From positions 6,014,001-6,078,000 of the forward strand of contig OZ281497.1 of assembly GCA_965637545.1 (NCBI GenBank): DNA of 64,000 bases, written 5' to 3'. The stretch is from Phallusia mammillata (Eukaryota). Every line of letters starts with the position of its first letter. Positions within the stretch are counted from its first letter, which is position 1. Of this stretch, positions 3,200 through 64,000 are shown piece by piece. A program made the translations under genes and the position numbers. A model generated the notes under the pieces. That model was given only the letters and a program-made list of their open reading frames with translations. It was not told the origin of the DNA and did not search any database.

Positions 3200-26775
<23,576 letters not shown>

Positions 26776-35135: not shown

Positions 35136-57937
<22,802 letters not shown>

Positions 57938-60347: not shown

Positions 60348-63300
60348 ATGTTTACTTTTGTAATATGTTTAGCCTGCTGTATTGGAATAAGTCTAACCCA
60401 ACCGGATTTAGTTGAGAATGTCGGTAAGTTATGTTTCAAACAGAAAATAGTTTGTATTAAAACTTCACTTGTTATGTCAGACGGTGTTTATACTGACAAA
60501 ACCCTAAACAGGGCAAATGAAAGCGGCTAAGTTTTTATGTAATATTTTTATGCCAAATCTTTGCAATCTAAGAAATTACGGCATAAAAACTTTCAAAAAC
60601 AGACAATTTAAATCGTAACAGGCACTTGAATTCAGCCTATTTTTAATTTTTTGTACAAAATACGACATAATGACCAAAAGTATACACTAAACATAAAAAG
60701 CGATATGCTGTATTTTTTAACGTGCTGTAAAATAATTTCTACTTAATATAGCGCATAAGTATTTCAAGAACGAATTTTAGTTTCCTTGACTGAAACGTCT
60801 CTTCCCTAATACATTCGTTACTTTTTCCGCCAAATATTTAGTTGCGGCCCGAAACTGTTTTGTTTCGGCCCGAAACCGATGTTTTGCTGACCACAGTGTT
60901 TTGGGTTGGCTCACTGTGTTTGCGCACTTGCCGAACAGACCGTGTCATGCGTCGTCTCGCTTCGTTGATTTGAAGTGATGTGCACGTGCTGAAGTTGAGT
61001 CTGGTCTCAAAATATGAACTTGTAACTATTTACCGCCAATGTCAACTCACACAGATGCAAAGCTCTTTGAAATATATTTAGACAGGAATGTAATGGCCTC
61101 TGAGAGCATGCGTTAAAAACATGCTTGGTTATACCTAACGCAACATAGAACTTTCAAAGAGGGTGTATACTTTGGACAAAAATACACAATAAATTATTCG
61201 AATTTTGTCCTAATGCTCGAATAATATCCACGAACCCAACACTGATCAAGGCAAGTCAGCCCAAACTCATCTTTTATTGCAGGTTATATGTTTTTTCAGC
61301 TTGAGTTCCTAGGATTCAAACGCGTAAAACCAAAATTCAAATTTCTTTTGTAGTGGAAACGGTGCATAAGTTCTCATTATCACAAGTCGCTATCTAATGA
61401 AGGCAAAACCCATCTAAATCATTAAATTTTTAAACGAACTTTTATAATCGAAGCACTTTGTCATATTAAACTGAACAATTTGCCAGTCTGAATTTATCGT
61501 CGGAGTTTTGTCCATAACTTAGTAAAGTGATCAAAACGCTGTAAAACGTGTGATAGTGCTTTATTTGTATGTATAAATAGGCTAACTCTCTGCAAATTGA
61601 AACAAAAATCTACTGTATTGTTTAAATTCCGCAGTCACGGCACTAAACGACGAAGAATACAGGGTAGCCGTTACAGGAGCAAACGGAACAATATTTTCTC
61701 CTAACGTTCCGTCACCATCTCCAGCAAACTTCACTTGTAGTTGGACAATCACTGGTCCACCTGACACGGTATTAATGTTACAACTAGTCAAGTAAAAAAC
61801 TGTTAAATTTGTATATTCTTACTTGAAATAGTTCATGTTCTTTTTAAATCGAGTTGGTTCTTGCTTTACCTTTCAAAAAGGACCGAATTATCCCAAGACA
61901 TGGAGTACTTTGCTTCTTGTATATCGATAGTTAACTTTAACATGTAAATGTCATATATTTAGATACTGATTGTGGAGTTTGATTATTTTACCATACCCTA
62001 CTCTGATGGATGTACTGATGCACGTATTTCGTTATACGATGGAAACAGCACCTTGGCACCATTGGTATGGACTATGTAATGTGCTAGTTTAAAAAGTATA
62101 ATATCTCACACAAAATTGTAAACTGTGGTTTGTATCAAAGCAAATTGTAAAATCTGTAGGACCAATTTTTTCATGTAACGAGTACAATTGCTTTTCAGCA
62201 TGAAGACCGCCATATTTGTGGGTATTATTCATCGGACTTCAGATCATCAAGCAACATAGCGCTACTCGTCTACAAAGCATCTGATACCTTTTCAACACTA
62301 TTCAGCCTGCACTGGTACTCGATAGGTAACTTGCTTTTAAATCGGTGGTTACCACCTAGCGACTTTTACTATGGCTTGCATGGTATCAACTAAACCCTGT
62401 TTGAATGTGTACGCCCATTGTTCTTGACTACATTGGCATATTGATCCCTATGTAAGTTGGGTCAGTTAAGTTGTAATTCCTGATCTAAAATTCCTGATCT
62501 AACTTAAAGGTAAGCTTCGGCGGGTATCACTAGTGGTAGGCGCACCACAGGTTGAGTACCATTACTTTAGGCCAAAGCTAGTTTTTTTTTACTTTGCTTG
62601 ATTGAAGGGGCTTTGTGTTCAAACGTGTTTTGATATTTTCTGTTAGAAAACTTATGTGTTGCACCATTTGTCCTTAACTCAACGTCTGGTTCTATCACAT
62701 CCCCATTGTATCCACAACCTTACCCTCGTGCTCAGCAGTGTGAATGGAGAATTGAAGTTCCTATCAATAAGGTTTGACATTTGATTACTGTGGCTGACAT
62801 TTGATTACCGTCCATAAAGTGTTGATTGACAGGACGTAGCGTTAACGTTTATCAGATAAGATGAACATAAATTCATAACTGGGATCAGCCCTGAAGCGTC
62901 GATGCAGACCAGCGATCACGGCACACTCCTATGTAAATCACAGTACGCCAGGCCCATTACAGGAATCATACCGAATCAGCCGGTCACCAAGCATTCACCA
63001 CCATATGGCAAGGCGTGGACTAGAAAAATCTAGCCTGCGGTGGGATTCGAACCCACGACAGGAGTCTTTCCGGGACTCGCGCTCTACCAACTGAGCTACG
63101 CAGGCTCAGTGGAGAATCCGCCGAAAGTCGAATCACAAGCACCGTTGCCTGCCTCGTATGCTGCACATGTCAGCTTCCAGTTATGAATTGTGCTTGTGAT
63201 TCGACTTTCGGCGGATTCTCCACTGAGCCTACGTAGCTCAGTTGGCAGAGCGCGAGTCCCGGAAAGACTCCTGTCGTGGGTTCGAATCCCACCGCAGGCT

Positions 63301-64000
63301 AGATTTTTCTAGCCTACGCCTTGCCATATGGTGGTGAATGCTTGGTGACCGGCTGATTCGGTATGACGCCTTTAATGGGCCTGGCGTACTGTGATTGTCA
63401 TTTATCAGATATTCGTGTTTAAATTAAACCTATTGCCTAAAAGGTTGCGGAGTCTGTTGTGGTTTGTGTAATTTATAGTATTTGATTGTTAAAGCTTGGT
63501 TCTGCCTTCGGAAACATTACTTATTACATGATATTAGCACCAGCAACATGTACGTACAAATCCCATACAAAACCGAACAAATTTGATACTTTTAATTCAT
63601 GTTAATGTCTCATGTCTCACAGGTCATTCACGTTACGTTCAACGATGTTGATATCTCCAACTCATATGGTTGCTATAGTAATTACTTGCAAGTTTTGGAC
63701 GGTGAAGAAGTGGTAACGTTTTGTGATTAGATAAGTTATAGCTAAAAATTTATATCCGTTTAACTAAATATTTCCCTTTTAAACATGGCTGCAGTAAGCG
63801 GATGCTACTACTAAAAAAAAAAACATAATTAACATTAAAAAGATACACTCTGCTTTACCACATTGTGTCCAAGAGTGTTTAAAATAAGTTAACCATGAAT
63901 TGTCGGTAAACATTTTACATTAACAACACTGAAATGCCAACCTTGCTTGCACAAGCTGACAAAAGTTGATTTTTGAAACTGTTTTTTATTTGTTTTCAGT
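60348..64000 (+). CDS. Gene C (5' part): signal peptide, an extra N-terminal CUB and a CUB homologous to CUB 1 of A and B; continues past the window
   Basis: Exons 60348-60423 (MFTFVICLACCIGISLTQPDLVENV), 61635-61768 (GTIFSPNVP...FTCSWTI), 61963-62064, 62199-62325, 62647-62771 and 63623-63712; the next acceptor AG is at 63998-63999. Confidence 0.85.
63033..63105 (-). tRNA. tRNA-like gene, GGA anticodon, short variable loop (non-canonical)
   Basis: GCCTGCG TA GCTC AGTTGGTA GAGC GC GAGTC CCGGAAA GACTC CTGTC GTGGG TTCGAAT CCCAC CGCAGGC. All four stems pair, A and B boxes are intact, and TTTTT lies 4 nt downstream. Atypical features are C33 and a 2-nt D/anticodon connector. Confidence 0.55.
63227..63299 (+). 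tRNA. tRNA-like gene, GGA anticodon (inverted second copy)
   Basis: Same cloverleaf with one acceptor-stem mismatch (GCCTACG), followed by TAGATTTTT. Confidence 0.5.

What the first reader, a model, noticed from the sequence alone, without database searches (positions are those of the whole stretch)
62848..63411. Mobile element carrying a complete, terminator-equipped tRNA-like gene (GGA), inserted as a head-to-head palindrome
Seen: the tRNA is internal, with a leader of at least 70 nt and a tail of about 170 nt. It has four fully paired stems, perfect A and B boxes and TTTTT 4 nt after its 3' end. Pol III should therefore make a pre-tRNA-sized RNA, unlike a SINE whose tRNA head is 5'-terminal and read through. 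The GGA anticodon sits in a class I, Lys-like body with C33. Established: G34 Ser tRNAs are generally absent in eukaryotes, and SerRS needs the long variable arm. Two divergent copies form a stem of about 205 bp in the gene C pre-mRNA, flanked by an 11-bp TSD. Inference: a tRNA-gene-bearing transposon family that may yield a tRNA mimic and dsRNA (editing or siRNA substrate).
Basis: partly seen in the sequence, partly recalled or inferred. Interest (0 to 1): 0.75.

Follow-up and report, generated by a model that had tools for sequence, protein, structure and literature searches.

The report
Palindromic tRNA-like retroposon insertion scar
This is one intronic copy of an abundant 355-base non-coding jumping element of an animal genome that carries a tRNA-like gene. 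Its head-to-head palindrome is the scar left by a Penelope-like way of copying RNA into DNA, not a purpose-built device.

Summary
There are two tRNA-like modules (pseudo-anticodon GGA, C33), 212-nt inverted arms that are 96% complementary, and an exact 11-bp target-site duplication (TSD) at 62848-58 and 63401-11.

The element is one insertion of a young family with a 355-bp unit. At least about 700 copies of its tRNA-like core lie in this 240-Mb genome. In about 90 sampled loci:
- 3' ends fall at two fixed sites 79 nt apart (T1 and T2), while 5' ends vary.
- Copies are solo, tandem (period 355) or head-to-head.
- 35 of 74 insertions have exact TSDs of 11-16 bp in AT-rich DNA.
- 19-20 of 21 TSD-bounded inverted composites pair one T1 end with one T2 end.
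- The two arms of a composite share subfamily variants.

These are the published scars of Penelope-like elements: two internal reverse-transcription start sites, a one-sided "tail", and both DNA strands extended. The unit has no hammerhead ribozyme, so it is not a retrozyme in the strict sense.

The window copy lies in a correctly spliced intron of a multi-CUB gene. Dispersed copies decay neutrally. Pol III transcription, a tRNA mimic, dsRNA effects and the helper element were not shown. This scan had already reached the same reading for this family on other DNA, at least seven times. I class it as a new variant of a known kind.

The parts
62848..62858 (.). Left copy of the 11-bp target-site duplication TTTATCAGATA. 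Its last two bases (TA) could equally be element sequence (unit positions u77-78).
62859..63176 (-). T2 arm: an inverted, 5'-truncated cDNA arm. Read on the minus strand it runs from unit position about u113 to the T2 terminus (...GTTCATCT(TA)). It includes the 79-nt 'tail' u1-u79.
63031..63106 (-). tRNA-like module 1: an intact cloverleaf with pseudo-anticodon GGA and C33, antisense to the host gene. The T5 run lies at 63024-63028 (seen as AAAAA on the plus strand).
63177..63189 (+). 13-nt junction filler CCAGTTATGAATT. It is identical to unit positions u53-65 in direct orientation and probably marks a template jump at the join of the two arms.
63190..63396 (+). T1 arm: a 5'-truncated cDNA arm from unit position u148 to the T1 terminus (...GGCGTACTGTGATT).
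63226..63301 (+). tRNA-like module 2, sense to the host gene. It is decayed: an A5/C68 mismatch in the acceptor stem and a T-to-C change in the D loop. The T5 run lies at 63304-63308.
63397..63400 (+). Four extra bases (GTCA) between the T1 end and the right TSD. They match neither the unit nor the target.
63401..63411 (.). Right copy of the 11-bp target-site duplication.
62771..63621 (+). Host intron (GT...AG) of a multi-CUB-domain gene. The flanking exons are joined in an RNA contig, so splicing works despite the insertion.

Best explanation
The 564-bp feature is a single insertion of a non-autonomous, non-coding retroposon family with a 355-bp unit and an internal tRNA-like gene.

Shown here: the family spreads through an RNA that is reverse-transcribed at the target site. 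Reverse transcription starts at one of two fixed internal sites 79 nt apart. T1 ends ...GTGATTT and T2 ends ...GTTCATCTTAA. Synthesis stops at variable 5' points, and templates can be longer than one unit.

Inferred for this insertion: both nicked DNA strands primed cDNA synthesis on the same or near-identical template. One strand started at T2 (left arm, 318 nt) and the other at T1 (right arm, 207 nt). The two 5'-truncated cDNAs were joined head to head with a 13-nt filler. The staggered nicks left an 11-bp TSD. Because both arms happen to include the tRNA-like module, the result is a palindrome with about 212-bp arms.

Inferred helper: this behaviour matches what is published for Penelope-like elements (PLEs). 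The helper is therefore most likely a PLE reverse transcriptase/GIY-YIG endonuclease encoded elsewhere in the genome.

Inferred, weakly, for the tRNA-like module: it is kept in the source copies, most likely as a portable Pol III promoter and/or RNA-processing signal. It is not a decoding tRNA, and in dispersed copies such as this one it simply decays.
For: Family size and unit: at least 708 genome matches to the 39-nt tRNA-like core with up to 2 mismatches, and 3785 first-look candidates. The 355-nt consensus came from 21 full units.

Ends: of 113 mapped segments, 82% of 3' ends fall at T1 (u351-u7) or T2 (u74-u85). The 5' ends are spread over the whole unit.

Target sites: 35 of 74 insertions have exact TSDs of 11-16 bp, mode 13. 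TSDs are 26% GC against 37% in distal flanks.

Architecture: of 33 insertions with a TSD of 11 bp or more, 12 are simple and 21 are inverted composites. 19-20 of the 21 composites pair one T1 end with one T2 end. If ends were drawn independently, mixed pairs could not be expected in more than half of the composites.

Single event: arms of a composite agree at polymorphic family sites in 57 of 69 comparisons (83%). Random pairs agree at 50% +/- 8%, and 0 of 2000 permutations reach the observed value. In the window, the arms share 4 of 4 diagnostic variants and differ by 7 private changes.

Independent example: L002, 1 Mb away, has the same architecture with its own 11-13-bp TSD and unrelated flanks.

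Long templates: arms longer than one unit lie inside TSD-bounded insertions, for example 610 nt in L006.

Literature match: a purified PLE protein cleaves and extends both strands and starts reverse transcription at two adjacent internal RNA sites, which explains the 'tail' (PMC11167929). PLE insertions are 5'-truncated, partly tandem, often with an adjacent inverted 5'-truncated copy and a tail at one end only (PMC8557442).

Possible helpers: GIY-YIG matches inside open frames of up to 973 aa occur at many loci of this genome.
Against: - No autonomous PLE sharing sequence with the unit was identified.
- The 79-nt tail is about twice the published 30-40 bp.
- The unit has no hammerhead ribozyme, unlike canonical PLE pLTRs and animal retrozymes.
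- In vitro, the PLE studied showed no difference in start site between the two strands, whereas here the two arms almost always use different sites.
- TTTTT directly after the tRNA-like module should stop Pol III before T1 and T2. Many insertions also include sequence upstream of the module. A simple Pol III transcript therefore cannot be the usual template.
- Transcription of the family was not demonstrated. Its depth profile in RNA-run contigs parallels that in a DNA run.
Confidence: 0.72

Rival explanations
1. A LINE-dependent SINE-like element: an ordinary non-LTR retrotransposon mobilises the unit, and the inverted arms arise by twin priming as in L1 insertions.
For: Fixed 3' ends, 5' truncation and variable TSDs of 11-16 bp are also typical of LINE-mediated retroposition. 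Many LINE-type reverse transcriptases with long open frames exist in the genome. In L017 a LINE ORF2 C-terminal fragment (zf-RVT) abuts a family copy.
Against: In twin priming the inverted segment starts at variable internal sites. Here the inverted arm starts at one fixed second site, T2. About two thirds of TSD-bounded insertions are inverted composites, and nearly all pair T1 with T2. There is no poly(A) or microsatellite tail. The tandem/partial-tandem organisation and one-sided tail are described as PLE-specific. The L017 adjacency is a single case without a TSD.
Confidence: 0.13
2. A ribozyme-free retrozyme analogue: multimeric transcripts are cut at the tRNA-like module by RNase P and RNase Z instead of a hammerhead. 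The unit-length RNAs are circularised and then copied by rolling-circle reverse transcription, which gives circularly permuted and multimeric insertions.
For: Some insertions are circular permutations of slightly more than one unit, for example L003 with 359 nt between its TSDs and L034 with 356 nt. Multi-unit arms occur inside single TSDs. Unit size and tandem organisation resemble animal retrozymes of 150-450 bp (PMC7229834).
Against: Insertion 5' ends do not cluster significantly at the module's ends. Six ends fall at u184-189 against 1.9 expected, which is not significant after scanning 355 positions. T1 and T2 do not coincide with the module's ends. RNase P/Z products carry 5'-P and 3'-OH, not the ends used by the RtcB pathway (my own knowledge). 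Tandem genomic arrays can supply multimeric linear templates. The contigs laid here cannot show circles.
Confidence: 0.1
3. A DNA transposon (MITE or foldback type) carrying a tRNA gene as cargo, with the palindrome as its long terminal inverted repeats.
For: This copy is a near-perfect palindrome flanked by a TSD. A 24-nt, 79% complementary inverted repeat also links 62870-62893 with 63166-63189.
Against: The outer ends of the composite are not inverted repeats of each other, because one is T2 and the other is T1. About a third of TSD-bounded insertions have no inverted part at all. The 5' ends vary, TSD length varies from 11 to 16 bp, and inner junctions differ between insertions. The 24-nt inverted repeat is explained by the 13-nt filler copied from u53-65.
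Confidence: 0.03
4. A pair of functional host tRNA or tRNA-mimic genes, kept by selection at this locus.
For: High Rfam scores (56.8 and 50.1 bits), intact A and B boxes, and a T5 run after each module.
Against: The module has C33, two nucleotides between the D and anticodon stems, and a GGA anticodon without the long variable arm of serine tRNAs. The right copy has lost its acceptor-stem pairing. Family copies decay as fast inside the module as outside it, 2.4% against 2.0-3.3%, with no compensatory changes. Old copies in the same window have lost the module.
Confidence: 0.02

Closest known systems
Penelope-like elements (PLEs) and their insertion footprint (Penelope/Poseidon, Neptune, Naiad/Chlamys; PMC8557442, PMC11167929)
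   Same: Strong 5' truncation, partial tandems, and an adjacent inverted 5'-truncated copy. Two internal reverse-transcription start sites give a one-sided tail. Targets are AT-rich and TSDs vary in length. Non-autonomous derivatives are known, such as MRC1 of Chlamys.
   Different: The unit has no ORF and no hammerhead. Its tail is 79 nt rather than 30-40 bp. It carries a complete tRNA-like gene with a T5 run. No sequence link to an autonomous PLE has been shown yet.
Animal non-LTR retrozymes (PMC7229834; bioRxiv 10.64898/2026.07.22.740005)
   Same: Short non-coding units in the 150-450 bp size range, organised from monomers to tandem multimers and dispersed through the genome. They are proposed to be non-autonomous partners of PLEs. 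According to earlier notes of this scan, hammerhead retrozyme families with the same kind of scars coexist in this genome.
   Different: The defining type I hammerhead ribozyme is absent. No circular RNA was shown. A tRNA-like module sits where a processing motif might be expected.
tRNA-derived SINEs (SINE2)
   Same: A non-autonomous retroposon with a tRNA-derived module that has intact A and B boxes. It is abundant and young, with TSDs.
   Different: The module is internal, about 184 nt from the start of a full unit, and is followed at once by TTTTT. There is no LINE-type tail or poly(A). Copies are laid down as tandem and inverted composites with two fixed 3' termini.

Membership tests
PLE-type (Penelope-like) retroposition, non-autonomous element | Fixed 3' end(s) with a high degree of 5' truncation | tested here: met
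   93 of 113 3' ends fall at T1 or T2, and the 5' ends are spread over the unit.
PLE-type (Penelope-like) retroposition, non-autonomous element | Partial tandem (pLTR-like) organisation | tested here: met
   Arrays with period 355 and arms of more than one unit inside single TSDs.
PLE-type (Penelope-like) retroposition, non-autonomous element | An inverted 5'-truncated copy adjacent to the main copy, forming inverted repeats | tested here: met
   21 of 33 TSD-bounded insertions, including the window copy and L002.
PLE-type (Penelope-like) retroposition, non-autonomous element | An optional 'tail' produced by two internal reverse-transcription start sites, often at one end only | tested here: met
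   T1 and T2 are 79 nt apart, and 19-20 of 21 composites carry the tail on one arm only. The length differs from the published 30-40 bp.
PLE-type (Penelope-like) retroposition, non-autonomous element | AT-rich target sites | tested here: met
   TSD GC is 26% against 37% in distal flanks. Motif detail is blurred by microhomology with the element's T-rich end.
PLE-type (Penelope-like) retroposition, non-autonomous element | Sequence shared with an autonomous RT/GIY-YIG element of the same genome (the region recognised by its reverse transcriptase) | not tested
   GIY-YIG matches lie in open frames of up to 973 aa, but the loci could not be fetched. No RT or EN open frame of 170 aa or more adjoins any of about 75 sampled insertions, except one LINE ORF2 fragment beside a copy in L017. 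A 146-aa GIY-YIG fragment lies about 400 bp from the L091 array.
Animal non-LTR retrozyme | A type I hammerhead ribozyme in each unit | tested here: not met
   An Rfam scan of 2.5 tandem units at E-value up to 5 finds only the tRNA model.
Animal non-LTR retrozyme | Unit expressed as circular RNA | tested here: inconclusive
   Only assembled contigs were available. They cannot show ends or circles, and the depth profile in the RNA runs parallels the DNA run.
tRNA-derived SINE (SINE2) | A 5'-terminal tRNA-derived head from which Pol III reads through the whole element | tested here: not met
   The module lies at u185-258 of a 355-nt unit with TTTTT at u262-266, and many copies extend upstream of it.
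Functional serine tRNA (anticodon GGA) | U33, one nucleotide between the D and anticodon stems, and the long variable arm needed by seryl-tRNA synthetase | tested here: not met
   C33, two nucleotides at position 26, and a 5-nt variable loop.
MITE / foldback DNA transposon | Terminal inverted repeats at both ends and a TSD of fixed length | tested here: not met
   The outer ends are T2 and T1, which are unrelated sequences. TSDs are 11-16 bp, and a third of the insertions have no inverted part.

The most novel reading that the evidence does not exclude
The tRNA-like module is the working counterpart of the hammerhead in retrozymes. Source copies would be transcribed from its Pol III promoter, or cut at it by RNase P and RNase Z. 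That would make this family a Pol III/tRNA-processing-dependent parasite of Penelope-like elements, and its roughly 700 loci could also release a short, non-decoding tRNA mimic. The near-obligate pairing of one T1 arm with one T2 arm would then report that a dimeric PLE enzyme copies a single RNA from two start sites at once.
Probability: 0.2. Interest if true: 0.7.

Novelty: new variant of a known kind. Interest (0 to 1): 0.42.

Why it matters
Penelope-like elements are the least understood class of retrotransposons, and their known small parasites (retrozymes) are defined by a hammerhead ribozyme. This family has textbook PLE scars but carries a tRNA-like gene instead. That would show the ribozyme is dispensable for this lifestyle.

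With hundreds of young copies, the family also offers a natural data set on where reverse transcription starts and how the two strands are used in vivo.

For genome annotation, these copies inflate tRNA gene counts: two false 'tRNA-Ser(GGA)' calls in this window and roughly 700 copies of the tRNA-like core genome-wide. They also place long hairpins in introns. For this particular locus nothing special is indicated, because the host gene is still spliced correctly.

Tried and rejected
- Hammerhead or other known RNA families in the unit: none apart from tRNA. A sub-threshold MIR5062 match only reflects the hairpin.
- MITE or foldback reading: rejected by the census.
- The 11-bp TSD as element sequence: BLAST extended the family match into it because 6+2 bases resemble the unit. 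However, the repeat is exact on both sides and fits the family's TSD range, so it is a true TSD with microhomology.
- Clustering of insertion 5' ends at the module's ends (an RNase P/Z signature): not significant.
- Selection on the module in dispersed copies: none. Divergence is equal inside and outside it, and there are no compensatory changes. Older copies are only slightly more conserved in the module, 10.5% against 12-17%, and the sampling was biased toward an intact core.
- Expression: the RNA-labelled runs hold family words, but the depth profile parallels a DNA run. About 0.2x DNA carry-over would explain it.
- Parent tRNA: the D arm is identical to Lys(UUU)-like and Tyr(GUA)-like sequences in the genome. 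The parent is not settled.
- Literature: no paper in the library combines Penelope-like, non-autonomous and tRNA-like elements in this sense.
Full report
**What is at the site.** ARAGORN and the Rfam tRNA model both find two tRNA-like modules. One is at 63031-63106 on the minus strand (56.8 bits) and one at 63226-63301 on the plus strand (50.1 bits). They are the only matches above gathering score in the whole window. They lie in inverted arms of 212 nt (62931-63142 and 63190-63401) that are 96% complementary. The whole structure is flanked by an exact 11-bp direct repeat, TTTATCAGATA, at 62848-62858 and 63401-63411.

The module has A and B boxes that match the consensus and a TTTTT run 3-4 nt after its end. 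It also has C33, two nucleotides between the D and anticodon stems, a 5-nt variable loop and GGA in the anticodon position. The left copy and the family consensus fold into a cloverleaf as their minimum-energy structure. The right copy has an A5/C68 mismatch and does not.

**It is one copy of a large family.** A search of the window's own 240-Mb assembly with the right arm gave 3785 first-look candidates. The scored matches were 92-100% identical over most of the query. A 39-nt piece of the module matches 708 places with up to 2 mismatches. From 21 full units I derived a 355-nt consensus. In its coordinates:
- u355 is the last T of ...GTGATTT. This terminus is called T1.
- ...GTTCATCTTAA ends at u78-80. 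This terminus is called T2.
- The tRNA-like module is u185-258.
- TTTTT is u262-266.

I then mapped the unit onto 87 sampled loci and the window. The first 30 loci were the best matches. Another 60 were the first exact-core places on three contigs. One further locus, L091, was mapped separately.

**Anatomy of the insertions.**
- Of 113 segments, 93 (82%) have their 3' end within a few bases of T1 or T2, whereas 5' ends occur all over the unit.
- Of 74 insertions, 35 have exact flanking duplications of 11-16 bp, mode 13. Up to 3 of these bases may be microhomology with the element's T-rich end.
- Targets are AT-rich: 26% GC in the TSDs against 37% in distal flanks.
- Among the 33 insertions with a TSD of 11 bp or more, 12 are simple. 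L003 is an example, with 359 nt between its TSDs, a circular permutation of slightly more than one unit.
- The other 21 are head-to-head composites whose two 3' ends face outward.
- In 19-20 of these 21 composites, one end is T1 and the other is T2. Independent choice of ends cannot give mixed pairs in more than half of cases.
- The inner junctions differ from insertion to insertion and sometimes contain short extra pieces of the unit.
- Arms longer than one unit, and arrays of up to 4.4 units, occur.
- The two arms of a composite agree at polymorphic family sites in 83% of comparisons. Random pairs agree at 50% +/- 8%, and 0 of 2000 permutations reach the observed value.

**The window copy in this frame.** Reading left to right, the insertion consists of:
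1. the TSD (62848-62858);
2. the T2 arm on the minus strand (62859-63176), which on the plus strand reads from T2 down to u113;
3. a 13-nt filler identical to u53-65 (63177-63189);
4. the T1 arm on the plus strand (63190-63396, u148 to u354);
5. four unmatched bases, GTCA (63397-63400);
6. the TSD again (63401-63411).

Both arms carry the same four subfamily variants (u190 C, u323 G, u324 A, u331 T). They differ only at seven private positions, two of them in the right module. This fits one event from one template followed by about 1.7% decay per arm, which is the family's average divergence.

A second insertion 1 Mb away (L002) has the same architecture, unrelated flanks and its own TSD. The palindrome is therefore a recurrent insertion scar. 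The arms are about 212 bp long only because both cDNAs happened to run past the module.

**Mechanism.** Fixed 3' ends, variable 5' ends, TSDs of variable length, no terminal inverted repeats and no coding capacity together indicate target-primed reverse transcription by an enzyme supplied in trans. The particular scars are those described for Penelope-like elements:
- Insertions are strongly 5'-truncated and organised in partial tandems. They often have an inverted 5'-truncated copy alongside, and a 30-40-bp tail that is often present at one end only (PMC8557442).
- A purified PLE protein cleaves and extends both DNA strands. It starts reverse transcription at two adjacent internal RNA sites that are not homologous to the target, and this accounts for the tail (PMC11167929).

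Here the two start sites are T1 and T2, and the tail is u1-79. The genome has many GIY-YIG matches inside open frames of up to 973 aa, so helpers of this kind plausibly exist. The link to a PLE therefore rests on scars, not on shared sequence. An ordinary LINE with twin priming is the main rival. It does not explain a fixed second start site or the T1/T2 pairing.

**What the tRNA-like module does.** This remains open. It is not a decoding tRNA. In dispersed copies it decays like the rest of the unit, 2.4% against 2.0-3.3%. The stems that my sampling did not bias show 0 compensatory and 30 broken pair-cells. Three old copies in this same window (36313-36662, 20679-20859, 25154-25205; 75-90% identical, all ending at T2) have lost or degraded it. 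The consensus nevertheless keeps a perfect cloverleaf, boxes and T5 run (84 of 93 copies retain TTTTT), so the source copies seem to need it.

A Pol III promoter is the simplest role. However, TTTTT lies upstream of T1 and T2, and many insertions include sequence upstream of the module. The template must therefore be a read-through or externally driven multimeric transcript. Processing by RNase P and RNase Z, as a stand-in for the hammerhead, is attractive but unsupported. Insertion 5' ends do not cluster significantly at the module's borders, and no hammerhead or other known ribozyme is present.

**RNA evidence.** Only assembled contigs were available.
- One contig from an RNA-labelled run joins five exons, including 62644-62769 to 63621-63712. 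That run therefore contains RNA, the element is intronic in a plus-strand gene, and splicing is intact.
- Exon-by-exon Pfam scans show CUB-domain pieces on both sides of the intron. I did not search the joined exon model.
- Family sequence is present in the RNA-labelled runs of three studies. Its depth profile parallels that of a DNA run, and roughly 0.2x DNA carry-over would explain it, so expression is not shown.
- The intron RNA is predicted to form the long hairpin. Editing or siRNA production could not be examined.

**Comparison and novelty.** The family works like a non-autonomous PLE partner and resembles animal retrozymes in size and organisation. It fails the retrozyme's defining test, the hammerhead. 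It also fails the SINE2 test because the module is internal and followed by a terminator. I found no paper in the held library describing a PLE-type element with a tRNA-like module.

Earlier notes of this scan reached the same reading on at least seven other stretches of this genome, including my L002. I had formed the same idea before reading them (note) and tested it independently here. Those notes call the organism a sea squirt, which I did not check.

**Verdict.** This is a real, ordinary copy of an unusual family, which I class as a new variant of a known kind.

Noticed in passing
window 36313-36662, 20679-20859, 25154-25205: Three older copies of the same family, 75-90% identical to the consensus and all ending at the T2 terminus. 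The first has a 19-nt deletion that removes the 3' part of the tRNA-like module and the T5 run. A 12-nt inverted piece just upstream hints at another composite.
   Followed up: partly
Rfam gives no match at gathering score in the window. I did not determine the boundaries of its element.
   Followed up: no
L017:1850-2920 (minus strand): An open frame of 357 aa with a zf-RVT match (LINE ORF2 C-terminus) runs directly into the 5' end of a family copy that ends at T2. No TSD was found. It may be chance adjacency or a clue to a different helper.
   Followed up: partly
L091:216-1777 and L091:2172-2609: An array of one inverted T2 piece plus about 4.4 tandem units lies 400 bp from a 146-aa GIY-YIG open-frame fragment on the opposite strand.
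   Followed up: partly
L086-L090 (contig C3, about 100 kb apart) and L050-L052 (contig C2): Five loci share exactly the same 757-nt structure (u32 to u78). Three others share the same inverted 61-nt piece plus a 669-nt arm. These look like segmental duplications that carried family copies along, and I removed them from the counts.
   Followed up: no
G000:C1:30989801 and G000:C2:16009579 / 16017220: Sequences with the same D arm as the module but with U33 and TTT or GTA anticodon loops. They are probably true tRNA-Lys(UUU) and tRNA-Tyr(GUA) genes and are candidate relatives of the module's ancestor.
   Followed up: no
window 25681-26466 (plus strand): A 262-aa open frame with a GDSGGP motif, which looks like an exon of a trypsin-like serine protease.
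   Followed up: no
window 62775-62811: Two copies of a 17-nt direct repeat (TGACATTTGATTAC[T/C]GT), 20 nt apart, at the start of the host intron.
   Followed up: no
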